The notes below the pieces were generated by a model. That model was given only the letters and a program-made list of their open reading frames with translations, did no database searches and was not told where the DNA came from. From Octopus sinensis (lineage: Eukaryota), in NCBI RefSeq assembly GCF_006345805.1, contig NC_043000.1:104284001-104348000 (forward strand): DNA of 64,000 nucleotides. The letters run 5' to 3'. Position 1 is the stretch's first letter. Each line of letters begins with the position of its first letter. Position numbers and translations under genes: made by a program. Of this stretch, positions 7,331-37,499 are shown one piece after another.

Positions 7331-7931
7331 GTATACTTTTTTCTCTTTTTATCATGCCCCATAAAAGTATAGTTTTAGGGAAATTTCATTTCCTCTTACA
7401 TATTTTAAATTCTACTCTAAATAATATCCTGTTTTAGTAATTTGCTCGTGTATATATTTTTTTAAAAATATGGTTGTGAATGACTGTGCTATAGTGGCTT
7501 TTTATTTATATAAAATTTCAAGTAATTAAGCACAAAAAGTAGATGCATTTTTTATTGAAAGTAAAAATTCTATAAAAGAAATAAACTATAGAAATACTAT
7601 GATAAAGAAAATCACTTATCAAAAGTACATGAATATTAAAATTAGATCATAACAAATAACCATTTTTAAAAGAAACAAACTCAATAAGATTCATAGCTGT
7701 TTTTTTTCCAAAATTGAAGCATTGTTTGAATAAAAATTTGTAAGTGAATGTGCCATGAAAGATTGCATAAAATTATGTTGTATAATTTTGAAAAGTTTAT
7801 TATAGAAATATCTGCAGTAAAAGTCAGGAGCATCCCAACAATGTATGGGAAAACGAACGATACAAAACAATTTTTCTTTATTTGTTTAAGCTTCATATCT
7901 GATGTAATTTGCATGTGTTCTCTCATTGCAG

Positions 7932-8033
7932 ACAGCCTTCAATTCTTTAACCGATATAATTGCCGATACAGATGTTCTCTACATTACCCGAATACAGAAG
8001 GAACGTTTCAGTAGCCTTGTAGATTATGAAAAG
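7932..8033 (+). CDS. CAD: CAD exon (ATCase)
   Basis: tgcAG / aag|GTATGT; [34 protein letters not shown]. Confidence 0.96.
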
Positions 8034-12449: not shown

Positions 12450-14250
12450 TAAAATCCTGCAGTAGGTTTAATTAAGAAAATGTTTGAAGTTTGCCTTGTA
12501 GAATTGCTTCACATGAACTTTGTGATTAGTCTTCAGAGATGTTCTAACAGCATCAGTTCTATAAAAGTGAGAATGGACAAAAACAAACACTAACAGCAGA
12601 AATACTTGTTGGACATCATTCTCTTATACCCTCAAAAGTTATCCTTCAGCAGCACATATCAAGAAAACATTAAATCCTGTTAAACATCAGCATGCAACTG
12701 GATGTTGGATGCTACAATTGCTAGGTGTTATTGTCTCTTATTGTAAGCACACATCCCTAACTTTAGCAAAAAGGCTTAAGTATTTCCAGTAATTACAAAA
12801 CTATAAATTCCAAGCTAGATCTACAATGAAGTACTGATCCAATCTCTCTAAAAATAAATAAATAAATGGCCTTCCAACTGCCTAGAATAAAAATGCTTTA
12901 CTGTGGTTCTTTGGAGTTGGCTGGTGATAATCGTACCTGTATTAAGGCCCTATAGTAACCACTACCCAGAATGTCAGTCCTTTGGAATTCCTTTACACAC
13001 TAGTATCTACTGTAACCATTGACTTACAACTATTCAAGAACATAGCTGTGTTCATCTTCCTCCAGGCCAAACCAATGCAAAATATATTGTACTTTTTATC
13101 AAAATTTCAAGTTAGTGTTGCTGTAACTTTATGAAGATATTTCTCAAGTTAAAAGAGGATCTAACTAGATGAAATATTAAATTTAGCGAAGCAGCTACCC
13201 TGGTCACTAGTAATGACTGGTAACCAAAGTTGATCGACCAGTACTGAGGGCATATCATCTCTTACATTGTAGACTGCTCCCTAAGGAAATAAGATGCAAA
13301 AGGATAATCAGGCAATTGTTTATATACTAAGCAGCTACATGTACACAAAACAGTAGTCTCAACTCCATCAAGCAGCACCTTGAAAGCCACATCATTTTAA
13401 AATTAATAAGTAACAAAACATAGACTATAGAAAGCACTGCTTGCAAGCAGATTGCTGGATACATGCCTTATAACTTGGGACTTAGCAGATGCTTTGAAGG
13501 GGATTTTATGCACGTGTATCACAAGAAATGTAATGCTCACAGTGGTCATTACCTCTTTATGGTGTCCAGACTATAACCTAGATAAGGATACACTTTGATC
13601 CAGTAGTAGTCTTGAAAAGGAAGAGACCCACCCATTGGATTATGCTGAAGATATGCAATGCCTGATAGAAGTGTCTTGGAGTGTAATAGATGGTAGTTAA
13701 GTTAGTTTTAGGTTGCATATAATGAATGCTCAACAATTCTTAATTCAAGACCAATTTATTTGTGTGGTAAAATAAAATTCTGGTAATTGTTCACAACAAA
13801 GTTTACACTCTGGAAAAACAATTATGTAGCTCTTGCAAAAGGCTCTGTAATTAAACTGCCATGGTGAGAAAATATACATACTGGGTTCATGTCAGCAAAC
13901 TGTAGCGGCATGTCTAGGTTGAGTGAGAGTTATAATAATGACTGTTAAAAGCAGCAAAATTAATGTTATTTCCTTATGGAGAGAAGTTGTTGGTTGGCTG
14001 GAAACAAGGTGCTAGAGCATGGAATGTGTTCCTTCTGTGTACAACTAAGTGCACTCACAGTATGCAGATAAACTTCAACTTCGGACTTTTGCCATTCTTG
14101 TGGTGGTGGTGGTGGTGGGGTTCTGATGAACAGGAAAAGATTAAAAAAATTCTGGCTGTTAGTGAACTGGGAAGAAAAGGATCCTCTTGACATTGCTGAG
14201 CAGATTTAACTAATTTGAGGAAAATGAAGAAAGGTAAGCTCTTAGTCAAT
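12450..14250 (+). mobile_element. Heavily decayed non-LTR retrotransposon (RT remnants)
   Basis: Broken-frame traces resembling RT motifs: DLADA at about 13485 and PLDYAEDM (YADD-like) at about 13630. No long ORF; boundaries approximate. Confidence 0.35.
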
Positions 14251-15119
14251 AGAAGTCATTGTCATTGTGGTAAGAAACGCATATTGTAGGCTTCTTGCAC
14301 TTCTGACTTGACTTGATTGCTACTATGCAAATTTTTGGATAGTAGCTGAAAATTTATGCAGTAAAGAAAGCTGGTTTTCAGCAACTCCAGTTAGACATTC
14401 TTGAATGGAATAGCAGTAAAACTTATTTGTCTAGAAGGTTAGCAGGACTGTACATAACCATTGTTGCTGTTATATAGAAGTGGTTTACAACTCTGGTCAC
14501 CAATTAGTCGTGATAGCTGGTTGTTGACTTCAATGGGTGCCCAGTACTTGATACATCTACATATTTGTTGTAGGTCACCAGTTGTTGTTATGTGTAGTAG
14601 ATGGGATGGTCGTGGCTGTAGTGCTTTTGATCATATGTCTGCCGTAGCAGAGCTGACCTGGGCTAAACAACAGATCTATCTTCTGCTAGGCATTGACTTG
14701 CTAGAAATAGGAGCCAAACTTCATCAAATCTCATCCTACCATCTTGACAAAAAGATGTATTGAAACATGCAGTCCTTAATATACAAAAGGATGAAATGGG
14801 ATGATGAGTACTAGACTGCTTTTCCAATAAAGATTTGCAAACTCACGAACAATGGAAAGATGTCTGCCTTTTCATCTTTGACAGCATGTAAAAAAATAAT
14901 CAAATGGGCATAGTTGCACATCCTAGAAATAGCAGCTAAATCTTCAAATATCTAATTGTCGACTGCAAAGACCTGACAAATAATGTGAGTTCATGGCTGC
15001 TTCCTGCACCTGTTTCGCATAGCCCCAGCCCATCCAAAGTACCTTGGATTGCAGAACAACCTGCTGTGCTTGAGGAGACCAATTGAGTCAAGTACATCAA
15101 TATCAAATGGAAATTGTAG

Positions 15120-15422
15120 TTGAGATACCTGTGCTGGTGGCATGTAAACAGCACCATCTGAACGTGGCCGATGCCAGTGCCGCCCTGATTGGCTTCTGTG
15201 CCGGTGGCACGTAAAAAGCACCAACTGATCATGGCCGCTGCCAGCCTCAGGTGGCACGTTAAAAGCACTCACAGATTGGTTGGCATTAGGAAAGGCATCC
15301 AGCTGTAGAAACACTGCCAGATTAGACTGGATCCTGGTGCAGCCTCCTTGCTTCCCAGACCCCGGTCGAACCGTCCAACCTGTGCTAGCATGGAAAACAG
15401 ACGTTAAACAATGATGATAATG
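15120..15422 (+). mobile_element. SINE with RTE-like 3' tail
   Basis: Internal repeats ggcacgtaaaaagcac, then ggcatccagctgtagaaac...gctagcatggaaaacagacgttaaac-(atg)n tail. Relatives at 22884-23020 and 24900-25275. Confidence 0.8.
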
Positions 15423-16224
15423 AATATTGGTTAGTTCAGTTTTTAAATCCACTTGTCCCTCAGCTTTTTGGAGTTTTGTGGTTGGTTTCTAAATCTGATT
15501 CCAGCAATATACTTAAAAAGTGTGGATTTGATAACTATATTAGCAAGTCTATGTTGTAAATTCCCATGTTTTTGGATTATGTTGATCAGAGTATGTGAGT
15601 AATAATTCCATCTACTCAGAATATACTGTTGTTATATGTCACACAGCCTGTGAGAAAAACACTCTCTTTGGGTACAGATTAAAGTTGTCTAAAATAGTTC
15701 AATTATGACAGCACTCTTTAGTGAACAGTGGTGTGACCAAGTTCATGTAATATGTTGGCTTCATTTCACTTATATTACTAATGTACTTGGAAAAGACAGG
15801 AACTTCACTGGTAATATATGTATAAGTTCTCTTTATATGGAGTATAAAAAACAATATTTTATGGTTTTGTCTTGATAAGAGATACTACTGATTGCAAATA
15901 GGTAGAAAATACAGAGTAGATATTTTCCAGCCTTATTTCCTTTCAGCTTGAAATAATAATCCTTTCTACTATAGGTACAAGGCCTGAAACTTTAAGGGAA
16001 TGGGGCCCGACCAGCAGAATACAAAAAGTGGAAGAGCAAAATGCTCCAGTTAGGTCAGACAATCATGGATGGAAGCTAATGTGGGCATTCACCACTTCAG
16101 ATAACCTTTCAAGATTCCTCTCAGCTTTTCTTGGTAAGGCAGGCCATTCTGCTCATCTCATCCCTGTTCCTCTTTGGAGATCTGGACCAAACTAGAACCT
16201 TAGCAATTTCATTAGTCTATTTGT

Positions 16225-16422
16225 ACAGAATGGTTTCAAATTTTTACACAAGGTCCAGCAATTTTGAGGGGAGGTGAGTTGATTACATTGCTCCAGTGCT
16301 CAACTGGTACTTTATTTAACTGACTCCAGAAGGATGAAAAGTAGATGGTGGGATTGGAACTCAGAACATAAAGAGCTGGAAGAAAAGCTATTAAGCATTT
16401 TGTCTGGCATACTAATGATTCT
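16225..16422 (-). mobile_element. tRNA-derived SINE
   Basis: Minus strand: gaatcattagtatgccagacaaaatgctt...ttctgagttccaatccc...aagtaccagttgagcactgg...aaatttgaaacca. Confidence 0.7.
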
Positions 16423-18321
16423 AAAACAGGTTTCTTTCTGACTTGACAAAAAGATATGTCTTAGTGCAAGTGTTAATATGTAATTGCATGATACTTGTAC
16501 CTTTTGCAAAAGCAACAAAAGTAAAGTGAACTAACCTCAACTAAGAATTGGAACCAGTTCATCAAGAGTTTTACCTTTTTGTCTCAGGTGTTCTTAAAGA
16601 AATAATTCCTCAGTTTCCTTCATAGCAAAAAAAAAACAAGCAAATCAATCCTAATTTTAGACGTCACCAACTGTAATTACTTTTGGTAAGTAATTATGTT
16701 AACTATAGAAACAGGGCTGTTGGTGTTCCAAATGTGTTAATTTCAACCGTTGGTATTGAATGTTAAGTCATTTGATACCTTATCTTGGCTGAAGGTATTT
16801 TAAACATGTGCTAAAACAGTCTGCTCATAATAAATTCTTACATTCATTCTTTTCACATTGATAGAGATTTATTGCTGCTCTGTATATCACTTCTGTGATA
16901 TCTCGCCATCTCCCTCAACAGCACTAACATACTGACAGGACGGATGGTCAAGACATTTTTACTCGATGGCCAACTGAGAGATAAGTACTTCAAAATAACT
17001 AAACTATAAATAGGTTCTGCAGGGTAGGAACACCACTTACTGCTGAAGGCAGTAGCAACTCTGTAAAATTGTGTGTTGAGTCTAGTCTCACATATGAAAT
17101 ATAGTTTGGAATGGAATGTGCTGATTTATTTCAAATCAACATTTTTTCAGCTTCCATAAGAGGAAGCCAACAAGGTGGGAATTCTTGTGTGCTCAACATG
17201 CCAAACCACTTCCACCATTAATCCCTATTCATAAACAAGGTCAGCAGCTTTACTAAATCTAATATTGCATCTGGCTAGATGCCTGTTAGCTTGTGAAATG
17301 TTATGTATGGCTTTGACCAATGTATGGCTCTGACACAATGTCTTTCTAGTCTTAAAGAGGGGGTGAGGTATATGTGGTCTTCTCAAAACATGCTCAATTA
17401 GCATTATTTCATATAAAATGCTCTCATTTCTTGGGTGCTTCGAAATGCAACTCAAGGGTGTTTGGCATTTATCTCTTCTACAAATGTTTTTGTTATTATC
17501 CAGATCTAGCTCACTACTATAGAAGGGTTTGGTGCAAGATTTGAAACAGTAACTTTATAATTTTAACACTTAAATGAACCAAGTAAAATAAAGTTTGTTT
17601 AGAAATACAACCCAAAAGGTTATGATGTTCACCACAAAACTTTCAGCTAAAACCAGTAAGAGCCTTTTCAAATTATAGACTTAATGATATCTGATGACAT
17701 TTCATGATAACTGCCCATGCATATTTCAAGCTGCAGTTTAGCACAAATTGGGTACCTTATAGGAGATTAGAGAATGCATCATCTCTGAACAACTGTTGAT
17801 CACATAAGATGCAAATTTGCCTAACACTGCTCATGCCTCCAATGGTTCACATCCAAGACACCAACACAAAATTTAATGGGTAAGCAACAACTGTAATATG
17901 GATGGTTTAGGTATACTCTTAGCAGAGAAGTGGGTAAATAGAATGAATGGAATAGCCAAGATCCTACAAGATTGAATTTATGTGACAGAAATTGTGATGA
18001 TTTATTCTGGAGCATAAGCTGGTCCTGAAGTCACTGGGAAAACTATTTGGAAAATTGTTGAACTGTATGTAATTGCATGAGCAGAACTATAATTCAAAAA
18101 GCAGTGGTCTTGCTGTGAGCATCCTGCTTTTTCAGAGACTGCATATCACATAACATTAGTGTGGGTTTATATATATATATATAAATTTGACATGGGCTAT
18201 TCTTTCTTGTCTTGGGATTCATGGTCAAACGGCTGGGTGAAATTGCGCGAAAATCTATACATGTATGTAGAACGATCCGGAGTGATGCTGGGCTTTGTAT
18301 TTTTTTTCATAGCTTCAATGG

Positions 18322-18457
18322 TTACCGAGATAATCTACTATAATCATAATATTGTGTTTATGAATGAGAAAAGAATGTCATATTTTTTTCTTAGCTCCCA
18401 TGTTTACCAAGATAATCTACTACAATTACACTCTTGTGTTTATGAATGAGAAAAGAA
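18322..18457. repeat. Local direct duplication, period about 82 bp
   Basis: ttacc(g/a)agataatctacta...tgtgtttatgaatgagaaaagaa occurs twice. Confidence 0.7.
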
Positions 18458-19063
18458 AGGGTGATACATGAATAAGGAAGGATATGGTGATGTCATACTT
18501 GATAGTATGATGATGAAAATTGTACACTGAAAAAATAAATGAAAATGTTTAAAATTTGTGTGAATGTAAAAAGGGTGGGGTATGTGTGTGTGTGCGTGCA
18601 ATGGAAGTGTGATGGTTAACATTCAATGCTGAAAAGAATAACCAGCATTTCAACTGTGTATTTAGGATGTTTTCCTTGAGTAAAATCTGTTCTCTATAAA
18701 GGTACGTGTCTGTTTTTTGTTGTTATAATTTCTTTGGTATTTCTCGACCAAATTTTATTTAGCATCATTATTATTAAATTTATGCATTTTTAATCAATTT
18801 GGAGATATTTGCTATTGAGTTGCAAATTTTCTACAATGCATTTGATGGTTATTTGCTTTATTTCTCAGGCAAAATTTACAACTTACAATAAAAAAATAAA
18901 ATTATTTCATTCAAAAATTGATTAGCTGTTTTTAGTGATGACTTGAAATTGGAAATATTTTTTCTAACTGTATTTACTTGAAAAAAACATACTTTTCTTT
19001 ATATTTAGCAATTCTTTATACCTACTTTTACGATGCGCCTAAATAAAAACCATCATTATAGAT

Positions 19064-19289
19064 CAGCATTTCTCAACCTTTTTCACAATTCAGCACCCCT
19101 TGGACATTGAAGAATTTATTTCTGCGTCTGTGTTGATGAAAAGTTTAATTCAGATCCCCATGTATCTTAGGTAGACCAGCTGACCCATGAAAAATCTGAC
19201 AAGGGGATGGGGGGAGTCAGGAAATTTTCATACAGCTGGAGGCTCTAATCGAAACAGGGGACCCGAAATGATAAGGTTGAGAAATGCTG
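19064..19289. mobile_element. hAT-type MITE (226 bp)
   Basis: Perfect 17-bp TIR cagcatttctcaacctt / aaggttgagaaatgctg and perfect 8-bp TSD ttatagat (19056-19063, 19290-19297). A partial reversed relative lies at about 41332-41410. Confidence 0.92.
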
Positions 19290-21122
19290 TTATAGATTAT
19301 GCCTAACTGAAAACGATCACAGCCACATCATCCAAACAGACCAGGCTTAGCTGCTAGTATATATATAAAGGTGGCATAGTAAACTTCTGAAACAATGAAA
19401 GACTCAAACACTCATGAAGATAGAAAACACACTTTATGAAAAATATTTAAATTTAAATTATATTTTAAAGACTCCAATTACTGTGTTTTTAGACACAGAT
19501 GTACTTACAGATGCCATTTGAACCAACTGCAATAAAAATTCTTAGCTAAGTCAAACCTGTTTACTTTCATCAATTTGGGCAAGGATAGCATCTTGTACAT
19601 TGGCAGTGTCCTAGATGCTATATAGTCACAATGCCTGAAGGTGAAGGAAATAAAAGGTAACAAATTTCAACATCTAACATATGGCCTTGCTCAACATGCA
19701 GGAATTAATAGGAATTTGATACTATAATTACTACATATAAGCAGGCATAAAATATGCATTTAATTTTAATTAGGAACTAAGATCAGATGTTCTAAATGTA
19801 AAGGCACCAATGAAATAAGATTAAGAAACTTACTATAAGTCTGACTACTCAAACTTAGTTGTTACCTGATATGGCTATAACATGCAAAAATGGACACAGT
19901 GACAGTCAGAGAACTATTAGTTCATTTGGTAAGAAAACAGGTCTTTCTCAATATCTTCATAAGCAGTTGGGTGTAGTAAGTAATGGATGTAGATCTGTAG
20001 CAGGAGAGAAATTAGCCAGTTAGGTTGAGTAATGTTAGTTTGCATAACCAACAATTGTATTCCTTTCCATTAGCAGTCTCAGGAAGTCCTATGTAAATGT
20101 TGTTGGTGCTTCCTCCCACCTCTAAGCTATTCATTAAAGAAAAGAAGTTACACTTCACTTTCTGAAGTATACAATATAAAAAAAAAATCCATTCCAAACA
20201 ACTGATTTTAACAGATGCATCCATCTGGCATTGGAGATAATAAGCTAGAATATATTCTGTTTTAGGGAACAAATAAATGAACAGCTACAAAGAATTCAAG
20301 CATGCATCAATATTCAACTTATGAACATTATCAATATATTTGCTTTAGTAAGGGTACTTCAAAATAATTCTAATTTTGGTGCAACGCCAGCAATCTTAAG
20401 AGGAGTGGGCTAGACAATTATATCTATCTCAGCACTTAACTAGTACTTCATTTTATCAGCCCTGAAAGGATGAATTCTTGAGAATTTGAACATGGAAATG
20501 CAAAGAACTGGAAGAAAAGTTGTCCAACTTACAAATAATATAATGGCTTCAAATTTTGGTACAAGGTCAGCAATTTAAGGGGTTGGAGGTAATTATATCA
20601 GCTATTCAATATCTGGCTTAACTGAATATGGTTTAATGAGGATTCTCTATGTGTGTGTACATTTATATACATAATAAAGTTGGATGGACCATGGACAGTT
20701 CACATGCCACAAATGTTTCAATAGCTTGGTAATTTATTAGCAATCAGGATATTATGTAGGCAAAAGCCACCAGCTATTTCTTTGGTCATTTTAAAACAAT
20801 TCGAATAAAAAAATTTTCCCAAAACTTCAATTTTGAGAAAAAACTCATTGATCCCATCAATCTTCACCACATGGCATATAGCTAATGTTGATGTTGCAGA
20901 ATATTTCAGATCATTAAACAATTGAATTTTACATTTTTCTTATGATCTGATGACAAAAAAGGGATATTAATTTATTAGGTATCCCAACAATGTACACCGC
21001 TAGCCAGTTTCATGCTGAAAATTACCAAGCTAATATGATCAGTAAAATTCAAGCCAAATGATAACTGTTCTATATTAATTTTCCATGCTAACAGGGGTTA
21101 GACATTATTATTAAGTGGACAC

Positions 21123-22094
21123 TCAACAGCCACTGAATGGAGGGCTGGGCATGCTGTGGTTGCTGATGTGCAAACATGTGCTGAGATTGCAGCATCTCCA
21201 GCGTTTCCTTGACAGTGAGCAGGTGTGGTCACTGTAAGAGACTTTTCTGCAGCTTGTCTCTTTGACTGAGCTGCAATCCTGGATTAGGCATAGACCAAGG
21301 CACATGGAGTTCTGTCAAGCGCCCACAGCCTTCTGCCAGGTGGGCAATGCAGTCGGTGGTAGTTCTACTCTAGCGTTCTATAGAGGGCTAGTGGAGGGAA
21401 AGTGCGACGACGTTCTCGGGGAAACTCTGGGCATCAATGAAGATCAACTGACCGGTCTGTTTCGGAGAACTTTCAGGCCTGGGCCTATGGATAATTTCCA
21501 GAAATCCCTTGCTTGGCAGTGCTACTGAGGGGCACTGAAACTTTACAGACACAGAAGTGCCATCAACTGGGCCTGCTCAAGGTACAGCCAGAACAATGAA
21601 ACCATTCTGCATGCCCTAGTATTGCTGACCTGTGAGTTTGTCAAACACCTACTGCCCCACCACCCTCTTTTGGCCGGGAGAGGCAGGCAATTTTTATTTA
21701 TTTTGTGGCTGTAGCAAAAGAGGTAGTATGATGGACCCATTTGAAAGGGCTAAAGACAGAGACTTTCCTCTTTGGGGGGGAAGTGTTGCCTTGTAGCAAA
21801 TTTGTTGTAAGGTGGGCAAATGTTGGAAGAATGGCCAGTGTGAAAGGACCAATTCTGAGCATGCAACAGTAAAAAAAAGAAGGGCTCTTGCCCTGTTGTT
21901 CAGGCACCTGTGGCTTTTGTGGGTTTTTCCACGAGGACCTTAAAGTGCACCCGCTATTGGGAGTTTTTAATTTGTTCAATTTTTATTATATTGTGTACAT
22001 GCGAAAACCTATTGCATCATACTGTTTTTGTGTTTTATGTTGCTGTATGTCTTAATGCTTTGTATGTAAGCCCTTGTGGCTAATAAAAGAATTA
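21123..22094 (+). mobile_element. 5'-truncated Tx1/L1-clade LINE (ORF2 C-terminus plus 3' UTR)
   Basis: GC-richer island; broken frame ...NFQKSLAWQCY...NETILHAL...FVVRWANVGRM (zf-RVT-like); ends ctaataaaagaatta; 16-bp TSD attattaagtggacac at 21107-21122 and 22095-22110. Confidence 0.8.
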
Positions 22095-23740: not shown

Positions 23741-23971
23741 TCAAGGTGGCAAACATTCCAGCAAAGTTTGTTTAGCATAAGCACTTAGGCTATCAGGGAA
23801 TTTGACATCAAATTCAACAATTAAGTCCCCTCTGCGCATTGGTTGTTTAGCTAAAGGTAGTCCTTCACCCTGTATTCGTTTCGTTGTTGAAGGTTTGATG
23901 ATTTCTGTGAGACGGAAAGGGATTGTTCGATTACTGATGGTTGGAATTTGAATAGTGGTACCACAAAGAGC
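23741..23971 (-). CDS. DNAJB: DnaJ homolog subfamily B (DNAJB4/5-like) terminal coding exon
   Basis: tttttttAG acceptor; ALCGTTIQIPT...RIQGEGLP...RRGDLIVEFDVKFPDSL...LPP-stop. Joins exon 1 at SLRE|ALCG, as I recall for vertebrate DNAJB1/4/5; total 342 aa. Confidence 0.96.
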   Translation of the reverse strand, partial: ALCGTTIQIPTISNRTIPFRLTEIIKPSTTKRIQGEGLPLAKQPMRRGDLIVEFDVKFPDSLSAYAKQTLLECLPP

Positions 23972-29250: not shown

Positions 29251-31401
29251 CACACATCTATTCACAATCTGCATGAGTGCCGATATACGTAACATCTGAG
29301 AGAAGGCGGAATGCCGAAATTATCAATCGCCCACCATAGTATAGTAGTAGTAACAGCAAAATGGCTTTCTAGAACCATCTTACAACCATTATTTTAAAGT
29401 CCAACAGTTGTTATAAATGTATATAGAGACTTATTACAAGATCAGTATCATTTTATCGACACAAGAAATATGTAAACTAACGTAGAAAACCAACAGTATT
29501 TAGTCCGACACCAAGCATTCCTATAGACAAGCGTCGTAAATTATCTAGTGCTCTATAAACCGTAATTAGTTCGGATCTGTATGTTACGAATAAACATCGT
29601 AACTACGATTCTACAAAAAATTAAAATTTTCTTCCATAGAGGTAGATTTTAGCTCCTCCACCATTTATGATTATACAGTGCCTCATTCTTTTTTGGTTGT
29701 GCTTTTAAACAACGTAGATTCTAATTCTTCAAAAAAATATGCGTCACATAAATCCGAAAAAAAAAAAATTCGAAAACCAACACTGGGTGGGGGACCGAAA
29801 TCTCCCTCCCCCACTTTTTTCTTCAGTACCGATATTTCCGATGCTGGAAACAAGCATCTAAAGAAATCACAGCTTTTGGAATAATAGACCACTTACGACG
29901 CTATTCCATAGAAATACCCAGCAGTGTTTCCAGAACACTAAAACAAAAGAAAAAAGTTAACACTTCTCTACGATCTGGAGAAGAGAAACTTCTGGAAAGA
30001 TTCTAGTAGACCAGACTTAGAATGCAGTCGCCATTATCACTAATGAGAAAAGCATGAAAGTCACAATCGTATCCGAAATACCTACACGTGTGTGTGTGTA
30101 TAGACACACACACACACACTATTAAGATTAAACCCACCCACGTACTAATTGCTTCTGTTAAAAGAAGGCCAGCATTCCGATAGTGGTTAGGAATGTGCGA
30201 GAACTTTGCCAGAATAATGCAAACTGTTGTCGAGGAATGCTGTTATATATATATATATTGTAAGCTAAAGACAGAAGCCTAATAATATGCAAACAGTTGG
30301 TAGTTATTTTCTCAAGTATCGGGAAGCATTGTACTTTGCGTGTATTCATATATATATATATATAGATAGATAGATAGACAGATGAGACAGGAAGAAAGAA
30401 CCGTTAAGATATTTACAGAATGTTATCTTTTCAGTTATGTAACTATCGCTACTTCGGCCAGTTTTCAAACATGAATTAACATAAGTATTATGTACACACA
30501 TTGCATTGTCTCAAATACAACATAGAATATATATACTCGTGACTATGAAGAAACAAATATTTAATAAAAAGATTTTAAGACAATATAATTTAGGACAAAA
30601 ATGACCGACAGATTCCATATCGAGATGAATAAGCACTTAGAAAGCAAGGCATACAAGAAAACTGTAGTGGTCCAAATGTAGGCATTGCTTCCATTTACCA
30701 GTAATGGTTACAAACAGAGGTTCGAGAGTGGGGCACTTCCTTTCCAGGCAACCATGAAATAGAAGTGATTTTCCCTGTCTGAAGTAGGAGTTTTCATTCA
30801 AAATTAAAACTGAATGATAGATGGTGGACAGTGCCGGCCTCGACATGCTAGAAACGGCAGTCAAATCTTTTCAAAATCACGTCTTGCCATTTTAAAACCA
30901 GACAGGACAATGCAGACCTATTTATACGTATAATGTAACAGTTTCACTTTTCTTGAGATTTTACCTCCGTAATTTATAAGCTTCCACGTTCTATTCATGA
31001 AAAATATTCTGTAATTTTTTTTTAGTCCTTCATAGCTTTGCTGTTCTATAATATAAAATTAATTCAATTTGGATGCAAGCATTTATCCAAAACTTTTCTT
31101 CATTTATTAAAAATTCTCATTGAGCATTATTACTATTGCCATCAGCCATTTGTACTTGCGAAACTGAAAAGGGTACGTTATACTCCAAGATTGCGCAATA
31201 TAATCCTAAATACAAAAGGTCTGCATAACTGAATGGTCACAATGGGACTGCATTTGAAACACGTCAGCTTTAAAAAAAAACTTTAAAGACTTAAAAATCG
31301 GGCAATCCTATTGTTTATTTTTTTTTTTTTGCCTAAGGACAAAGTTTTGGACATTAAGTAATAATAATTTAAGAAAAAAAACGAGCTCTTGACTGACTCA
31401 C

Positions 31402-32199
31402 CTCTCTCAATGATATTTTAGCTTTATACCGTATATCATTTCCATCACGCGTGAAGACAGGATGCCGTTTGTCTCTGATGACAAACACAACATCTGCAGG
31501 TATATTATAAGGGGTTTGGTCTCCTTCTTTTGGAAATGTGATCTTCGTACCGGCTTTCCAACCGGGTTTGATATCTACTGTTAAGATTTTCTCTTCTCTG
31601 ACTTGTTTGTTCGACTGGACCATTATCGTTCGTGTGATTTTCATTTTCTTCGTGCAACCCGTGCAGATATCCTCAAGACTCACAGGTAGATCCTTGACAA
31701 TCGGTTTGTCTTGTTCCTTTTGTCGCCGGAACGACGGTCCACCCATATTAAAGCCATGTCTACCGAAGTGCGAGAATGGTTCATCTACATCCATATCATC
31801 GCCAACAAAACCGCCAGATTGGTGTTGCGATCTTTGATCACCTGGGAATGAACTAAACATAAACGAATTGAACGGGCCTTCATCCCCGAAAAACATCCTG
31901 AACGTTTCGTGCGGGTCACAGTGGAATGAGTAAGAGAAGTTTGCACCTTGTTCCCCACCCATACCACCGGGAACATTGCCCCTAAGTCCTTCTTCTCCAT
32001 AAGAATCGAATACTTTCCTTTTTTCTTTGTCGGACAGGATTTCATATGCTTCGGCTACCTCTTTGAACTTTTCTTCGGCTCCAGGAGATTTGTTTTTGTC
32101 CGGATGGTATTTCAGAGCCATTTTCCGATAGGCTTTCCTGATGTCATCTTCCGTTGCATTTTTATTGAGACCTAAGATTTTGTAATAATCTTTCCCCAT
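31402..32199 (-). CDS. DNAJB: DnaJ homolog subfamily B (DNAJB4/5-like) first coding exon: J domain, G/F region, CTD-I
   Basis: [10 protein letters not shown]...YHPDKNK...[11 protein letters not shown]...DDMDVDEPF...VSLEDI...KKMKITR...[12 protein letters not shown]; donor gag|GTGAGT at 31401. The exact vertebrate orthologue cannot be assigned. Confidence 0.97.
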
Positions 32200-32253
32200 C
32201 GTTTATATTTTGCGTTTTAAATCAATTTTTAAAACAAAATTCTATCAAGCCTT

Positions 32254-32363
32254 CTATTTATAAAAGAAAAAGGGAGTAATGGGATTGACTGCTTTTTCTC
32301 TCAATGTGTATAGATATATATGCAACAATTAAAGTATATTAAAAAAAATCCTAAATTGTTTAC
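32254..32363 (-). other. Possible 5'-UTR intron of DNAJB
   Basis: Minus strand tag|GTAAAC ... ccctttttcttttataaatAG. No transcript evidence. Confidence 0.4.
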
Positions 32364-32418
32364 CTACAATAGTTAAAAAGTGAAAGCTTCACAATCCAAT
32401 TACACGACATAGCATCGT

Positions 32419-32428
32419 AAAATGGCGG
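32419..32428 (-). promoter_or_regulatory. YY1 motif just downstream of the predicted TSS
   Basis: Minus strand CCGCCATTTT matches the YY1 consensus CCGCCATnTT. Confidence 0.55.
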
Positions 32429-32457
32429 TGTGAAAAGTGTGTAGTAAGACGCCGAGG

Positions 32458-32471
32458 CTATTTATAAATAG
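32458..32471. promoter_or_regulatory. TATA box (palindromic)
   Basis: ctatttataaatag is a perfect 14-bp palindrome, giving TATAAATA on both strands, 13 bp from the HSE. Confidence 0.75.
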
Positions 32472-32484
32472 TCTGTGACGTGTA

Positions 32485-32514
32485 CTTCTAGAACATTCGA
32501 GAACCATCTAGAAA
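32485..32514. promoter_or_regulatory. Heat-shock element, six alternating pentamers
   Basis: cTTCt aGAAc aTTCg aGAAc cATCt aGAAa (one core mismatch), upstream of an Hsp40 gene. Confidence 0.92.
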
Positions 32515-32515
32515 G

Positions 32516-32537
32516 CCAATCAGATCACGCCACGTCA
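32516..32537 (+). promoter_or_regulatory. ERSE (CCAAT-N9-CCACG) overlapping a UPRE (TGACGTGG on minus)
   Basis: CCAAT cagatcacg CCACG tca: exact 9-nt spacing; CCACGTCA at 32530-32537. A second TGACGTGT lies at 32476-32483. Confidence 0.75.
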
Positions 32538-32860
32538 CAGGTGATGTTTGTGTTATTTTATTACGACAGTAGAAACAAAAAAAAAACAATGACAGATAAC
32601 CTCCCTTTAATTAAGTTTAAATGCTGAACAGAAAAGCGGTAATTAGCAGCAAAACTGGTTAATTATCATGTTAATAGTTTCTTATACAAAGGCTGGAAAT
32701 ATCAGATCTAGTGGTGGTGTTGGGAGACATTGCGAGTGGAAAAGAATAAAAATGATTACTGAAAAAATTGCCGGTTCGCCATAAACTGATAAAATATGAA
32801 TTATAACACAACCAACGAATAATAATTTTTTTAACAAGGTATAAAGTATCCTGTGTATCA

Positions 32861-33427
32861 TACTTAAGGTGGATATACGGTAGAAAGCCACATAACTGTG
32901 GTATTCGTCTAGAGAAAGCATCTTATACAGACGTATTGTGCTAAAAAAAAAAGCACAGGAGAACATCAGTAGCAGACGAAAAGCGTCCAGCAGTGGCGGT
33001 GGAATGGCTAAATCTAGATTTCCGGGTATTTGAACGTCATCAATAGCAAGCACTCACTAGCAACCGCATACTTAGACAGATGTAGCTCCTACTGACAGAC
33101 AAAAACAGTATTTAACAAATCATTAACATCAACGAATTTTTACCAAGCCTTGCTGGCTATTGGTGACACAAATGATTTGTTAATCTGTTTTTGTATAGCA
33201 ACAGAAGCTAACTTTGTCAAAGCGTGCGGTTGCTGGTGGTTACTTACCACTGGTGATGTGCAAATACACAGAAATCTAGATTTAGCAATTCTACCACTAC
33301 TACTGGGCGCTTTTCATCTGCTACTGATGTTTTTCTGTGGTTTTTAGCACTATACGTCTATACGAGACTCTTTCTCGGAGCGAATAATGCAATTACGTGA
33401 TTGTTTACAGTTTATCTACGTTGAGTA
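32861..33427. repeat. Diverged inverted repeat (about 205 bp arms, 156 bp spacer)
   Basis: 32861-33068 versus the reverse complement of 33225-33427, roughly 80% identical. Explains the similar ORFs 32682-33053 and 33150-33347. Confidence 0.85.
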
Positions 33428-35310
33428 AGATAGACTGCAATTTTGAACTAATACTGTTTCCGTCACTGATGACGAATTTTTTGACAAAAAGTTTCAGATT
33501 CAATAGTTATGACAACGAATCAACCCATTTTATTCTATAAAACAAAACCGGATCACAAACTTTGTTTTTAGGATATTCCCAACAGGATCCGACTACATTA
33601 TATTTGTTTGCCAAATATTTCCTTTTGTGATATTTTATGCCTTTTCCTGCAGAGATATTAGTGAAATCAGCTGGCTGCTAATGCGAATCGAATACCTGTT
33701 TCTTGACTCGGATAGCAAGGCGTTTACTTTCACTCTACAGCAATCGCTGCCACCATTAGTGATAACAACAGGGTCCTTTACATGATTGCTCGACTTCCTA
33801 CAAATTGTAGCTAATACCATCTCCGCAGCGAACCAATAGTTTTCACATTTCGACTATTTATAATCATCTAATCTAAGCTGTATAATTTTTCATGGTTCAA
33901 GGCCAAATGTAAAGATAACTTTGACCAAGAGATCCAATGGTTTAAAGAAGTTTACTGTCTGGTTTTCTACAGGTTAAGTGTTGAAACTGGAAATATATGT
34001 TTGATGTCCCGTCGTGTACATACCGAAAGCTACAGTTTTTATCCGGGCTAGGCAAATCCGTTGCATCTATTTTTCCCTTGAAAGTTTCTTTACTAATAAG
34101 AAGAATCAAACACAAGCTTGCCCGTGAAATACGAGTGTTGAATGTACTGGTGAGCCCTTACTCTGATGTTGCGGTGGAACGAACAGCATTGTTAAATTCA
34201 CCTTGAAGGACAGGGAGTTTAAGGAAGCGAATGCATACGAAAGAAATTACATCTGAAATTAGAAAATCAGAGAGACTCGGACATTCGTTCCATGCGCGCA
34301 ATTGGAGTTTGTAACAATACAGTATTGTAGTAATGTTCATAGAAGATGAAGCAGGATCAACAGTTACATTACTGACACTAGATACTAGAGAATTAACCTC
34401 GACTATATTATCTGTTAACTCAATTATTTGTTTTACGTTGTCTCTTTTTTAGTAGATGGGGAAATAGCTTAGGCTGATCACGTCGGAGTCACCAATATAA
34501 AATAATATGATTAACAGTTGCAAGTTATAAAATGTGGATGAGGCTGGTTTCTATTCAGGTCACAATTTAAAATAAGAAGTGTGTGTGTGTGTGTGTGTAA
34601 CCAATGAATAAATTCAAATATCAAAATGATATAGAAAGTAAAAAAAAAAAGCAAATGATTAAATCTTCCAGCAATTTAACAAATTAATTTTTCAAATCTA
34701 AATAATGTCCCATACTTAGTCCGATAAAAGAAGGACTTGTACGAACATAATGGTCACGAAAATTTCAGTGCCTGATCCTTGAAGAAAAAATTGATATTGC
34801 AACATTTTTCTTCCTTTTGTAAGAGAAAGGGCATGTTAAATACAATGCGATAGATGAAAAAGAACCAGCACAAAGATTTTCAAAATGTGAATGAGCTCAA
34901 GCATGTGCTAAAAGAGGCAGTCAATTGCATTTTTCCTGTATTTGGTCGATATAAATAACGAATCACTGTAGTACAAGAATAAAGCCATTCTCATGAAAAG
35001 GAATGATAAATGTACTCAATGAGAGAAAAATACGTTTGTGTGTCTAAATTGTTATAGTCCGTCTAACGATAAAGAGAATTCACTCATGACTCCATTCTTC
35101 GCAGTTGTGCTGGCAACAACTGATCCATTTTTAACTGCATGGCACAATGTATTTGACTGGGAAAATTTTGACACCACTTGGCAGTGTCTCTAGCTAATGT
35201 CACGACAAAATAAGCTGACTAAAAGGACAGTCACGTGACTATCGGGTGCATATCACGGTTGAACAGACAAAACATCGTGACTTTGGTGCTGCGTGAACAC
35301 ATATTATAAA

Positions 35311-36154
35311 CTAGCAGAATTGCCCGGCGTTGCTCGGGGCTGAATTGCTTGAAAGTACTGTTAATGATTGCACTGAATTATGATGATTATTCAGGCAAAT
35401 ATTGATATAAGTTTACGGTGGGAGATAAGGACTTAACGATCAAACGTGTGCCATTGCATTGTTTTGGGGAACCAAATTTCTGATGAGCATTATAGGGGCA
35501 CCAACTTTAAGTTTGAGAAAGTGTGGTGGTAGTCCGGGGTGCTCAAAGGAATTGAGTACCTCTATTGGATAGTTGATGACGTCCTCTGGGTCAGGAGTTG
35601 TATCGATAGACTGATATACATAGACTTCCCCAGGAATGAGTTTTAGCATTTCATCATTAATATGGTGAACAGTTTTATTCCTCGGGGCCAGTATAGCCTT
35701 TTTGCCAATCCAATCCATATTCTGATAATTAGCTTGTAGATCTGGGAACACTGCATCTCTGAGATCAGAAGGCGTCTTAACAATGGTACAAATGGAATCG
35801 ATGGCAATATTACCATTTTCATCCCCTGGTATTTTGCCTTCGCCAAGTGCAAGGAGGGTGTGAGGAAATGCTGCTGATGTGATATTACGTCGCATATGAA
35901 CACGCATATTGGTGTGAAGTTTGAGAGTTACTTCCCTTTATTAAAAAATATGCATTAAAATGGAAAAAAATGATGGTAAATTATTTGTAAAATCGTAGAC
36001 TCATCGTAGACGCACGCTAATACCCAGAAGGGCTCGATATGAATCACGACTATAAGATACCCGGTTTTGGTTAAACTGCATCGCAAAATGTGGGAGTAAT
36101 TAGGAATCTAAATCGGAGTAGACAGACACACAACCTTTCTTTTGTATATAAATA
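35311..36154 (-). mobile_element. Internally deleted Helitron carrying a PIF1-helicase fragment
   Basis: 3' CTAG|T with hairpin cccg-N8-cggg; ORF 35907-35440 ...AILAPRN..V..IN...YQSID...LNS...GLPPH.L.LKVGAPIMLIRNL (RepHel helicase); 5' end shared with the 4640-4936 copy. Confidence 0.9.
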
Positions 36155-36157
36155 TTT

Positions 36158-36506
36158 TCGTCCTAAAAAACTTTGTATGGAGTGAATGGTTACCTCTATG
36201 GAAATATATACACACACGTTATACATACATGTGTGCATAGATGAATATATAAATACATTTATATATCTATATACACTTTTGGGCGATCTTTGTGCTACTT
36301 AGAGATAACTTTAGATCTTATTTTCGTCCTAAAAAACTTTGTGCGGAGTGAATGGTTACGTCTATGGAAATATATACACACACATTATACATACATCTGT
36401 GTATAGATGAATATATAAATACATTTAAATATCTATATACACTTTTGGGCGATCTTTCTGCTACTTGGATATACTTTAGATCTTATATTCGTCCTAAAAA
36501 AACTTT
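36158..36506. repeat. Tandem repeat, period 165-166 bp (about 2.1 copies)
   Basis: tcgtcctaaaaaacttt starts at 36158, 36324 and 36489. Confidence 0.9.
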
Positions 36507-36528
36507 CCTGTCACACACTCATACACAT

Positions 36529-36566
<38 letters not shown>

Positions 36567-36890
36567 CCTCACACACACACACACGCACACTCACGCACAC
36601 ACACACACACACACATTAGCTTACAATTTTATTTATATATTTGCGTGTCTATGTGTGTAAAGAGGAAGTGGGAATGCAGAGTGAAAGAGTGAAATGGTAA
36701 AATATTTAGTTTTCTCGAATTTTTTCTGAAATGGGGGTGAAATTGAAAGAAATTTTGTATGCCATGACCGAATAGAAGTACTTTGAAAAATCATAGGTAA
36801 ACTCTAATTGAAGAAATTGTGTGAGGAGTAAATCGTTATGTATTTATTTGTTTCTATTTGCTGTGTTGTTGTTTTTTTGAGTAGTGGTTT

Positions 36891-36954: not shown

Positions 36955-37028
36955 CACTTTAATGGTTGCACACTTGCAAAGAGACAGGAGGAGAAATTAG
37001 GGTGATAGCATCAGTGAAGCAGTTCGCT

Positions 37029-37075
<47 letters not shown>

Positions 37076-37499
37076 AGCCCACACTAAGAAAAGCACTTCA
37101 CTTACACACTACAATGTGAGTTTTCTCGAAATTTTGCTTAATTGGGGTTGAAATTTTAAAAACTGGACCTGGCACGACCCGATGTATTCTACTCTTAAAA
37201 ATGCTAGGTAAATTGTAATTGAAGAAATCCTATATTGTAGATTTCTATAAGAGACAAAGGGAGGCAGATAAAATCTGCCTTTTATAATAAGAGATACGCG
37301 CAAGTACTAAACACCCTACAAGGCGAGGATATTGCGATGTTGTACGAAGTAGTAAAATTTTTATTTTCATATATAACATAAACATGTACATCTTTTAGAA
37401 CATTGTCAATTTATAAGATTTTGCCGACAAATTTTTAAATTAACATAGACATTTATTTACATGAAAGAAATTTTCCAGAGAACTTTCATCTAATTCTTC

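What the first reader, a model, noticed from the sequence alone, without database searches (positions are those of the whole stretch)
32419..32537. Composite HSE + ERSE/UPRE promoter on a cytosolic Hsp40: possible joint heat-shock and ER-stress switch
Within about 120 bp the sequence shows a YY1 motif, TATA, TGACGTGT, a six-pentamer HSE and, 1 bp later, a perfect ERSE CCAAT-N9-CCACG whose CCACG extends to the UPRE CCACGTCA. Established: ERSE (NF-Y plus ATF6) and UPRE (XBP1s) typify ER chaperone and ERAD genes, YY1 co-operates with ATF6 at the mammalian Grp78 promoter, and cytosolic DNAJB1-type genes are HSF1 targets. This protein has no signal peptide (starts MGKDYY). Inference: one cytosolic chaperone is wired to both stress pathways, with adjacent sites that could co-operate or compete.
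Basis: partly seen in the sequence, partly recalled or inferred. Interest (0 to 1): 0.75.

Follow-up and report, generated by a model that had tools for sequence, protein, structure and literature searches.

The report
Conserved octopus Hsp40 heat-shock promoter
This is the promoter of an octopus cytosolic Hsp40 (DNAJB1-type) gene, in which a bZIP site, an NF-Y CCAAT box and a heat-shock element have kept fixed spacing across octopuses and cuttlefish, but the two bases that make it a textbook ER-stress element vary between species, so the proposed heat plus ER-stress switch is possible but unproven.

Summary
The window is Octopus sinensis, and the gene lies on the minus strand. It is a two-exon DNAJB1/4/5-type J-protein with no signal peptide.

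I aligned eight distinct cephalopod promoters: four octopodids, Argonauta, three Sepia types and one other decapodiform. They show a sharp footprint. TGACGT is invariant at 6/6 positions, TGATTGGCT at 9/9 and the four-pentamer HSE at 17/20, while the spacers have diverged completely. There is no indel between TGACGT and the end of the HSE. TATA and the YY1-like CCGCCAT(T) are also conserved. Sepia transcripts start just downstream of TATA, so the YY1-like motif sits in the 5'UTR.

The ERSE pentamer CCACG is not conserved. It reads CCACG in Octopus and one Sepia type, ACACG in other Sepia, CTACG in Argonauta and AAACG in the other decapodiform.

Verdict: this is a genuine, deeply conserved bZIP/NF-Y/HSF heat-shock promoter module whose bZIP and NF-Y sites sit at ERSE spacing. 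ER-stress input is plausible (about 0.25-0.3) but untested, and the bases that define the ERSE show no detectable constraint. Interest is moderate.

The parts
32530..32537 (-). Distal bZIP site, TGACGTGG on the gene strand (UPRE-type). TGACGT is invariant in all cephalopods examined; positions 7-8 vary (GG, AG, GT, TT).
32516..32534 (+). Literal ERSE match CCAAT-N9-CCACG, in reverse orientation relative to the gene. The 9-nt spacing is conserved everywhere. CCACG is present only in Octopodidae and one Sepia type.
32514..32522 (-). NF-Y-type CCAAT box, TGATTGGCT on the gene strand. It is invariant at 9/9 positions in eight cephalopod promoters, and Haliotis has the same CTGATTGGCTG.
32504..32513 (-). 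The two distal HSE pentamers (TTCtaGAtgg on the gene strand). They are Octopus-specific and abut the CCAAT box. They are not conserved in Argonauta or the decapodiforms.
32484..32503 (-). Conserved core HSE, TTCTCGAATGTTCTAGAAGT (four perfect inverted pentamers). It is invariant at 17/20 positions, and all three variable positions fall in the 'n' positions between the GAA/TTC cores.
32476..32483 (+). Proximal bZIP site TGACGTGT between the HSE and TATA. It is conserved in Octopus and in Argonauta (TGACGTGA). Decapodiforms have GGCGGCGG at this position.
32458..32471 (-). TATA box (TATAAATAG on the gene strand; palindromic CTATTTATAAATAG in Octopus). It is conserved as TATAAATAG in octopods and TATATAAG in decapodiforms.
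32448..32452 (-). Conserved GCGTC block between TATA and the TSS; function unknown.
32419..32428 (+). YY1-like motif AAAATGGCGG (CCGCCATTTT on the gene strand), roughly +10 to +20 in the 5'UTR. CCGCCAT(T) is conserved in all cephalopods; Haliotis has CCGCCAT and Biomphalaria has CGCCATT.
32200..32440 (-). Inferred 5'UTR of about 240 nt. The TSS is placed at about 32436-32442 by its distance from TATA and by homology with the 5' ends of Sepia transcripts. No octopus transcript was available.
   Evidence: inference for Octopus
31399..32199 (-). Coding exon 1 of the DNAJB1/4/5-type gene (aa 1-267: J domain, G/F region, most of the C-terminal domain).
23741..23971 (-). Coding exon 2 (aa 267-342 plus the stop codon), after an intron of about 7.4 kb.

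Best explanation
Window 32419-32537 is the core promoter and proximal enhancer of the Octopus sinensis DNAJB1-type cytosolic Hsp40 gene, which lies on the minus strand. It is a fixed-grammar heat-shock module.

Proposed mechanism:
- HSF trimers bind the conserved four-pentamer HSE, about 20 bp upstream of a TATA box.
- NF-Y binds the invariant TGATTGGCT box 12 bp further upstream.
- A bZIP dimer binds an invariant TGACGT, whose centre sits at exactly the ERSE distance from the CCAAT box.
- By analogy with vertebrate HSP70 promoters, NF-Y would keep the promoter open and support both basal and heat-induced transcription.
- The bZIP factor and a YY1-like factor, acting on a motif just downstream of the TSS, would add basal or accessory input.

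What is shown: motif presence, conservation and rigid spacing across coleoid cephalopods, and TSS placement in Sepia.

What is inferred: which proteins bind, and heat inducibility.

The perfect ERSE/UPRE reading in Octopus rests on two bases (GG) that drift between species. The module is therefore best described as an HSE/NF-Y/bZIP heat-shock promoter with ERSE-like geometry. The identity of the bZIP partner (CREB/ATF1-type or ATF6/XBP1/CREB3-type) is unresolved. A dedicated ER-stress element is not demonstrated.
For: - Motifs and their uniqueness in the window.
- Gene identity and structure. The window is 100% identical to the O. sinensis assembly.
- Phylogenetic footprint in eight distinct promoters: TGACGT 6/6, TGATTGGCT 9/9 and core HSE 17/20 invariant. 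The flanking and spacer segments have 0/16, 0/7, 1/10 and 1/18 invariant positions. There are no gaps from TGACGT to the end of the HSE.
- Upstream of TGACGT the sequence breaks down. Octopodid L017 has a deletion of about 70 bp ending exactly at the site.
- Sepia mRNA contigs are colinear with the genome and begin just after TATA.
- The ERSE pentamer varies: CCACG, CTACG, ACACG, AAACG. It varies even between Sepia types that are 97% identical.
- Literature: CCAAT/NF-Y boxes are basal elements of HSP70 promoters that potentiate HSF1 (PMC3468683; PMC2312324). ATF1/CREB is part of the HSF1 transcription complex (PMC5449623). YY1 motifs are enriched within about 30 bp downstream of human TSSs (PMC11160661). 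Human DNAJB1 is not induced by tunicamycin (PMC3154502).
- Other lophotrochozoan orthologues have an HSE plus TATA, often with a TGACG-type site nearby. None has an ERSE.
Against: - The spacing from the bZIP site to CCAAT is exactly that of the ERSE, which is reported as fixed at 9 nt and conserved from plants to mammals (PMC5499772).
- No lineage has the palindromic CRE (TGACGTCA). The consensus is TGACGTG(G/T), which is the ATF6/XBP1 UPRE type (PMC8301375).
- A literal ERSE occurs in both deep clades, in Octopus and in one Sepia type. The CGTGT variant seen in other Sepia is reported as the bZIP28 site of a functional Arabidopsis ERSE.
- Octopods carry a second TGACGTG site next to TATA.
- All of this fits a UPR-type bZIP at least as well as it fits CREB/ATF1.
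- No binding or expression data exist for any cephalopod, so heat inducibility itself is inferred from the HSE alone.
Confidence: 0.55

Rival explanations
1. A true dual switch. The bZIP site beside NF-Y would be a working ERSE/UPRE bound by ATF6 and/or XBP1s (or a CREB3-like factor). The cytosolic Hsp40 would then be induced by ER stress as well as by heat, with NF-Y as the shared hub between the ATF6-type factor on one side and HSF on the other. The ancestral coleoid site would have been TGACGTG(G/T).
For: - Octopus has a perfect CCAAT-N9-CCACG that extends to TGACGTGG.
- The same perfect ERSE is present in a Sepia type, at the orthologous position only.
- The 9-nt spacing is invariant in eight promoters although the spacer sequence has fully diverged.
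- Position 7 is G in three of the five distinct lineages, and no lineage has the CRE palindrome.
- The CGTGT variant is reported in a functional plant ERSE.
- ATF6 needs NF-Y on CCAAT at fixed spacing.
- Octopods have a second TGACGTG(T/A) site.
Against: - The 'CC' of CCACG is not conserved. Argonauta has CTACG and decapodiform L005 has AAACG, so both lose the CGTG core at this site. Positions 7-8 behave like the neutral spacer.
- Position 8 differs between Sepia types that are 97% identical.
- The invariant half-site is the one distal to NF-Y, the opposite of mammalian ERSEs.
- There is a single copy, whereas ER chaperone genes typically carry several ERSEs (PMC5890977).
- Human DNAJB1 and HSPA1A do not respond to tunicamycin.
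- Hundreds of literal ERSE matches exist in the human genome (535 ERSE-I), so a match alone predicts little.
- There is no cephalopod ER-stress expression data, and I could not check whether octopus BiP or GRP94 use ERSEs.
Confidence: 0.27
2. The ACGTG cores are read by a non-bZIP factor, such as HIF/ARNT (RCGTG), or AhR/ARNT through the XRE-like TGGCGTGA inside the spacer. This would add hypoxia or xenobiotic input to the heat-shock promoter.
For: - GACGTG is present in the distal and proximal Octopus sites and in Sepia.
- TGGCGTGA is present in the O. sinensis spacer.
- That these sequences match the HIF and XRE cores rests on my own knowledge.
Against: - The invariant bases are TGACGT, including the TGA that bHLH-PAS factors do not need.
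- CGTG is lost at the distal site in Argonauta and L005.
- The XRE-like sequence is already broken in octopodid L017 (TGGCGCGA) and absent elsewhere.
Confidence: 0.05
3. The accessory motifs (ERSE, UPRE, YY1) are chance matches with no function. Only the HSE and TATA matter.
For: - Taken singly, TGACGTGK and the YY1 10-mer are not enriched over shuffles in the window.
- Given a conserved TGACGT-N11-ATTGG frame, the GG that completes the ERSE has a prior of about 1/16.
Against: - TGACGT, TGATTGGCT and CCGCCAT(T) are invariant, with fixed spacing, across lineages whose intervening sequence has completely diverged.
- That is the signature of purifying selection on the sites themselves.
Confidence: 0.05

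Closest known systems
Vertebrate HSP70 (HSPA1A) type heat-shock promoter: HSE, CCAAT/NF-Y, GC box and TATA (with an ATF-like site near TATA, from memory)
   Same: - An HSE lies close to a TATA box.
- A CCAAT box lies just upstream of the HSE. In vertebrates it supports both basal and heat-induced activity, and NF-Y pre-sets chromatin for HSF.
- A bZIP or GC-box element sits between the HSE and TATA: TGACGTGT in octopods and GGCGGCGG in decapodiforms.
- ATF1/CREB is a known HSF1 partner.
   Different: - This gene is an Hsp40, not an Hsp70.
- The order and spacing of bZIP, NF-Y and HSE are rigid over a very long time. For the human promoter, my recollection is that rotational alignment was reported as not critical.
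- The bZIP site is TGACGTG(G/T)-type and sits at ERSE distance from CCAAT.
ERSE type I (CCAAT-N9-CCACG; NF-Y plus ATF6/XBP1) of ER chaperone genes such as GRP78, GRP94 and calreticulin
   Same: - Octopus spp. and one Sepia type have an exact consensus match.
- The fixed 9-nt spacing and the NF-Y-quality CCAAT box are conserved in all cephalopods.
   Different: - CCACG is not conserved. The conserved half-site is the distal TGACG rather than the CCAC next to NF-Y.
- It is a single copy.
- It sits on a gene for a cytosolic chaperone.
- It abuts an HSE.
- ER-stress inducibility is untested.
UPRE (TGACGTGG/A; XBP1s-preferred)
   Same: - The distal Octopus site is TGACGTGG.
- The Argonauta proximal site is TGACGTGA.
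- Sepia has GATGACGTGT, which matches the extended XBP1 motif as I recall it.
- The ACGT core is conserved.
   Different: - Positions 7-8 drift: TGACGTAG in Argonauta and TGACGTTT in L005.
- No functional data exist.
YY1 motif as an element downstream of the TSS in human core promoters
   Same: An AAnATGGCGG-type motif lies within about 10-20 nt downstream of the inferred TSS. It is conserved in all cephalopods, and partly in Haliotis and Biomphalaria.
   Different: - On the gene's sense strand it reads CCGCCATTTT. I could not check whether this orientation matches the strand bias seen in human promoters.
- Binding by a molluscan YY1 or Pho homologue is untested.

Membership tests
Heat-shock element (HSF-binding site) | At least three contiguous, alternately inverted nGAAn pentamers | tested here: met
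   TTCtcGAAtgTTCtaGAA gives four perfect pentamers. Octopus has two more, one of them imperfect. Substitutions across eight promoters fall only in the 'n' positions.
Heat-shock element (HSF-binding site) | Located in the proximal promoter of a chaperone gene and conserved in orthologues | tested here: met
   The HSE lies about 20 bp upstream of TATA. It is conserved in octopods and decapodiforms. HSEs are also present upstream of the Biomphalaria, Haliotis, Mizuhopecten and Lingula orthologues.
Heat-shock element (HSF-binding site) | Heat-inducible, HSF-dependent transcription | not testable with these tools
   No cephalopod expression or binding data for this gene were found.
ERSE type I | CCAAT box able to bind NF-Y | tested here: met
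   AGCCAATCA fits the NF-Y flank preferences as I recall them. It is invariant at 9/9 positions.
ERSE type I | Spacer of exactly 9 nt between CCAAT and the bZIP half-site | tested here: met
   The spacing is identical in all eight promoters even though the spacer sequence has diverged (0/7 invariant).
ERSE type I | CCACG pentamer (ATF6/XBP1 contact), maintained by selection | tested here: inconclusive
   CCACG is present in the window, in four Octopodidae and in Sepia type A. Other Sepia have ACACG, Argonauta has CTACG and L005 has AAACG. This pattern is compatible with neutral drift at the two 'CC' positions.
ERSE type I | Multiple copies, on genes of the ER folding or ERAD machinery | tested here: not met
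   There is one copy in the window and one per orthologous locus. The gene product has no signal peptide and is DNAJB1-type.
ERSE type I | Induction by ER stress through ATF6 and NF-Y | not testable with these tools
   This needs tunicamycin or thapsigargin experiments, or binding assays.
UPRE | TGACGTGG/A | tested here: inconclusive
   There is an exact match at 32530-32537 on the minus strand. TGACGT is invariant but positions 7-8 vary between lineages.
Canonical CRE (CREB/ATF1) | Palindrome TGACGTCA, or the half-site TGACG/CGTCA | tested here: inconclusive
   The half-site TGACGT is invariant. No lineage has the full palindrome.
Class B (DNAJB1/4/5-type) cytosolic J-protein | N-terminal J domain with HPD, a G/F-rich linker and a DnaJ_C substrate-binding domain; no zinc finger and no signal peptide | tested here: met
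   - Pfam DnaJ at residues 4-65 and DnaJ_C at 169-325.
- HPD is present in ...KYHPDKN....
- The best solved relatives are DNAJB13 and DNAJB1.
- Sources name it DNAJB4-like or DNAJB5.
- Cytosolic localisation is inferred from the absence of a signal peptide.

The most novel reading that the evidence does not exclude
The ancestral coleoid DNAJB1 promoter would be a genuine integrator of two proteotoxic-stress pathways, built around one NF-Y. An ATF6/XBP1-type bZIP would dock at ERSE spacing on one side, and HSF at a fixed 12-bp spacing on the other. A cytosolic Hsp40 would then be induced directly by ER stress as well as by heat. Lineages that have lost the CGTG core (Argonauta, decapodiform L005) would act as natural loss-of-function variants.
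Probability: 0.22. Interest if true: 0.6.

Novelty: new variant of a known kind. Interest (0 to 1): 0.4.

Why it matters
If only the conservative reading holds, this is a clean example of an enhanceosome-like promoter in a non-model animal. Three sites keep base-exact spacing across the octopus-cuttlefish split while everything between them has diverged. That makes it a useful, compact (about 160 bp) candidate for a stress-inducible promoter for cephalopod transgenesis. It is also a test case for whether NF-Y spacing rules (the 9-nt ERSE rule) apply outside ER-stress genes.

If the ER-stress reading holds, it would show direct transcriptional coupling of the unfolded-protein response to a cytosolic Hsp70 co-chaperone. 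In human cells DNAJB1 does not respond to tunicamycin. Natural sequence variants among cephalopods would then provide a ready-made comparative test.

Tried and rejected
- **5'UTR intron and second TATA.** I considered a splice from GTAAAC to the TATAAATAG|AAGG near 32258, and the second TATAAATAG (32257-32265) as the real TATA box. I rejected both. That second TATA is not conserved in Argonauta, and Sepia transcripts are colinear with the genome from just after the HSE-adjacent TATA to the ATG.
- **Bidirectional promoter shared with TECR, as in Lingula.** tblastx of the Lingula TECR and RAD54 regions against the window found nothing. Upstream of the promoter there are only a foldback repeat and transposon fragments.
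- **More cephalopod promoters from metagenomes.** A scan with the CCAAT-HSE pattern gave 0 hits. I did not use the second scan, because looser patterns would mostly return chance matches.
- **Positive control: do octopus BiP or GRP94 promoters use ERSEs?** Not feasible.
- **Literature.** Takii 2015 (ATF1-HSF1) and Yoshida 2001 (ERSF) are not held. No paper on mollusc GRP78 ERSEs was found. The search for ERSE, HSE and DNAJB1 together returned only two general reviews.
- **O. maya thermal-stress paper.** It reports a 'DNAJB13' transcript that is upregulated at 30 °C, but its ORF is 316 aa. It is probably the true axonemal DNAJB13 rather than this 342-aa gene, so I did not use it as evidence.
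- **XRE-like TGGCGTGA in the spacer.** Rejected as not conserved.
Full report
**1. Observation**

- AAAATGGCGG lies at 32419-32428.
- The palindromic TATA CTATTTATAAATAG lies at 32458-32471.
- TGACGTGT lies at 32476-32483.
- A run of six alternating GAA/TTC pentamers lies at 32486-32513. Five are perfect and one reads ATC.
- One base after the last pentamer, CCAATcagatcacgCCACG lies at 32516-32534. It continues as CCACGTCA, which is TGACGTGG on the minus strand at 32530-32537.

The ERSE pattern and the HSE are each unique in the 64-kb window. The ERSE has 1 match against 0.03 expected, and the HSE has 2 overlapping matches against 0.30 expected. The composite TGACGT-N11-ATTGG is also unique, at 1 match against 0.02 expected. 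Taken singly, TGACGTGK and the YY1-like 10-mer are not above chance.

**2. What the locus is**

The window is 100% identical to Octopus sinensis assembly GCA_006345805.1.

The gene reads on the minus strand, with its ATG at 32199.
- Coding exon 1 spans 32199-31399.
- An intron of about 7.4 kb follows.
- Exon 2 spans 23971-23741.

The 342-aa product is identical to the protein that NCBI calls DNAJB4-like (O. vulgaris) or DNAJB5 (O. sinensis). It has a J domain from residue 4 with an HPD motif, a G/F-rich linker and a DnaJ_C domain. Its closest solved relatives are DNAJB13 and DNAJB1. There is no N-terminal hydrophobic leader, so a cytosolic or nuclear location is inferred.

In gene orientation the promoter reads:

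TGACGTGG - cgtgatc - TGATTGGCT - TTCtaGAtgg - TTCtcGAAtgTTCtaGAAgt - ACACGTCA - cagac - TATTTATAAATAG - ... - GGCGTC - ... - CCGCCATTTT - about 220 nt - ATG.

**3. Comparative test**

Using the homologue search and the contig look-ups, I fetched the orthologous locus from the following sources:
- O. vulgaris and O. bimaculoides;
- a more distant octopodid, L017-20, which is 79-90% identical in the upstream DNA;
- Argonauta hians and Sepia pharaonis;
- two further Sepia-like types, A (L025 and others) and B (L032-34);
- an unidentified, more distant decapodiform, L005.

The eight distinct promoters align without difficulty. Counting invariant columns segment by segment gives a textbook footprint.

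| Segment | Invariant positions |
|---|---|
| 16 nt upstream | 0/16 |
| TGACGT | 6/6 |
| next two bases | 0/2 |
| rest of the spacer | 0/7 |
| TGATTGGCT | 9/9 |
| next 10 nt | 1/10 |
| core HSE TTCTnGAAnGTTCnAGAAGT | 17/20 |
| HSE-to-TATA segment | 1/18 |

- The three variable HSE positions are exactly the 'n' positions.
- There is not a single gap from TGACGT to the end of the HSE.
- Upstream of TGACGT the alignment collapses. L017 has a deletion of about 70 bp that ends precisely at the site.
- TATA, a GCGTC block and CCGCCAT(T) are also conserved.

Ten spliced Sepia mRNA contigs are colinear with the genome from just downstream of TATA to the ATG. This has three consequences:
- the HSE-adjacent TATA is the real core promoter;
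- there is no 5'UTR intron in Sepia;
- the YY1-like motif is transcribed, at roughly +10 to +20.

**4. The ERSE question**

The first, conservation of the 9-nt spacing and of the HSE phase, is passed in every lineage.

The second, conservation of the ERSE itself, is not cleanly passed. The distal bZIP site reads as follows.

| Lineage | bZIP site | ERSE pentamer |
|---|---|---|
| Four Octopodidae | TGACGTGG | CCACG |
| Sepia type A | TGACGTGG | CCACG |
| S. pharaonis and Sepia type B | TGACGTGT | ACACG |
| Argonauta | TGACGTAG | CTACG |
| L005 | TGACGTTT | AAACG |

- The G/T difference at position 8 separates Sepia types A and B, which are 97% identical.
- Positions 7-8 are therefore no better conserved than the neutral spacer.
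- The invariant half of the site (TGACG) is the half distal to NF-Y. The mammalian ERSE conserves the proximal CCACG.

Three points work in the other direction:
- No lineage has the palindromic CRE TGACGTCA.
- G at position 7 is found in three of the five distinct lineages, and the consensus is TGACGTG(G/T). This matches the UPRE/ATF6 type (definitions in PMC8301375).
- The CGTGT variant is reported as the bZIP28 site of a functional Arabidopsis ERSE. The same paper states that the ERSE, with its fixed 9-nt spacing, is conserved between mammals and plants (PMC5499772).

Among the 34 loci fetched, 13 carry the literal ERSE pattern, one match each, and every match falls at this promoter position. 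Octopods, but not decapodiforms, carry a second TGACGTG(T/A) site between the HSE and TATA. Decapodiforms have GGCGGCGG there.

**5. Outside cephalopods**

None of the DNAJB1-type orthologues of Biomphalaria, Mizuhopecten, Haliotis and the brachiopod Lingula has an ERSE within 1 kb. All four have an HSE within about 200 bp of the ATG, and TATA-like sequences lie nearby in three of them.
- Haliotis has CTGATTGGCTG (the Sepia version of the box), a TGACGCG, a four-pentamer HSE, TATTTATA and CCGCCAT.
- Biomphalaria has the Octopus HSE half, TTCTCGAATGTTC, and CGCCATT.
- Lingula has TGACGTAG 5 nt upstream of its HSE.

HSE plus TATA, often with a CCAAT box or a TGACG-type site and a GCCAT motif after the TSS, therefore looks like an old lophotrochozoan theme. 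The rigid bZIP-N11-CCAAT-N12-HSE arrangement is cephalopod-specific in this sample.

**6. Mechanism**

The best-supported reading is a fixed-grammar heat-shock promoter.
- **HSF and heat induction.** HSF binding and heat induction are inferred from the conserved HSE.
- **NF-Y.** NF-Y binding is inferred from the invariant, consensus-quality CCAAT box. In vertebrate HSP70 promoters, CCAAT boxes are needed for both basal and heat-induced activity. NF-Y is described as cooperating with HSF1 and with ATF6 (PMC3468683; PMC2312324).
- **The bZIP partner.** A bZIP dimer is inferred on TGACGT. Candidates are CREB/ATF1, which is part of the HSF1 transcription complex in mammals (PMC5449623), or ATF6, XBP1 or a CREB3-like factor.
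- **The YY1-like motif.** Its position just after the TSS matches where YY1 motifs act in human promoters (PMC11160661). It does not match YY1's co-factor role at the Grp78 ERSE.
- **The two extra Octopus pentamers.** They fill the CCAAT-HSE gap but are not conserved. They probably lie inside the region that NF-Y covers (my inference), so the 'six-pentamer' HSE is a genus-level feature of doubtful importance.

**7. Verdict**

| Item | Verdict |
|---|---|
| Observation | Confirmed |
| 'Joint heat-shock and ER-stress switch' | Partly supported |

- The geometry and the site type fit an ERSE/UPRE. The two bases that make it a literal ERSE are unconstrained.
- There is only one copy.
- Human DNAJB1 does not respond to tunicamycin (PMC3154502).
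- Literal ERSE matches are common in large genomes: 535 ERSE-I in human (PMC5890977).
- No cephalopod ER-stress data exist.

My probabilities are as follows.

| Reading | Probability |
|---|---|
| Conservative reading (HSE/NF-Y/bZIP heat-shock promoter, bZIP partner unresolved) | about 0.55 |
| Real UPR input | about 0.27 |
| Non-bZIP readers of ACGTG | about 0.05 |
| Accessory motifs without function | about 0.05 |

**8. Novelty**

All the parts are known site types. HSE plus CCAAT is classical.

What I did not find described is a bZIP site at ERSE spacing sharing one NF-Y box with an HSE on a cytosolic J-protein gene. The search returned only two general reviews. Nor did I find a description of the base-exact conservation of that arrangement across the Octopodiformes-Decapodiformes split. 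As I recall, that split is dated to a few hundred million years ago; I did not test this.

I rate the finding a new variant of a known kind, of moderate interest. Its value depends on experiments that are straightforward to specify.

Noticed in passing
window 32853-33435: A foldback, MITE-like inverted repeat of about 580 bp lies about 320 bp upstream of the promoter. It has nested arms of 161 nt (79% complementary) and 95 nt (73% complementary). It is also present in O. vulgaris.
   Followed up: partly
window 35440-35907 (-): An ORF fragment with a Pif1 helicase 2B domain (E=2e-11). It is probably a remnant of a Helitron-type transposon.
   Followed up: partly
window 61015-62349 (-): A 444-aa ORF with a CCHC zinc knuckle and a lysine/glutamate-rich tail. 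It looks like a retroelement gag-like gene. The region has the highest G+C in the window (0.42).
   Followed up: partly
window 5795-6316 (+): An exon-like ORF matches the aspartate/ornithine carbamoyltransferase N-terminal domain (E=1e-40), probably the ATCase part of CAD. It is convergent with the DNAJB gene. A weak OTCace hit lies in the same relative position in decapodiform locus L005, which suggests conserved synteny.
   Followed up: partly
window 32257-32265 (-): A second exact TATAAATAG lies about 60 nt upstream of the ATG, inside the inferred 5'UTR. It is present in O. sinensis, O. vulgaris and O. bimaculoides, degraded in L017 (TATAAAAAAG) and absent in Argonauta. It could be an alternative promoter.
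   Followed up: partly
window 32606-32615: A block conserved among octopods contains the palindromic homeodomain-type sequence CTTAATTAA(A/G). In O. sinensis it lies about 70 bp upstream of the distal bZIP site. In L017 it directly abuts TGACGTGG, and in Argonauta it is followed by an extra GACGTCAC.
   Followed up: no
window ~32524-32531 (gene strand TGGCGTGA): An XRE/AhR-like core lies inside the ERSE spacer. It is present in O. sinensis and O. vulgaris, altered in O. bimaculoides (TGGCGTGT) and in L017 (TGGCGCGA), and absent elsewhere.
   Followed up: yes
window ~36350-36660 and ~36970-37150: Dinucleotide (CA/TG) microsatellites are visible as THTHTH and CVCVCV runs in the ORF translations.
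   Followed up: no
L024 (Lingula) 3181-9482 and 14948-21392; L021 (Biomphalaria) 1-5248 and 12178-21038: In Lingula the DNAJB1-type gene lies head-to-head with TECR and is followed by RAD54. In Biomphalaria it lies between a WD40 gene and RAD54. As I recall, DNAJB1 and TECR are also neighbours in human, which supports DNAJB1 orthology. No TECR or RAD54 similarity was found in the octopus window.
   Followed up: partly
L004 9625-9640 and L005 9752-9765: Decapodiform promoters carry a second, upstream CCAAT box (TTATTGGCGA or TTATTGGAGA) 54 bp upstream of the main one. It is absent in octopods.
   Followed up: no
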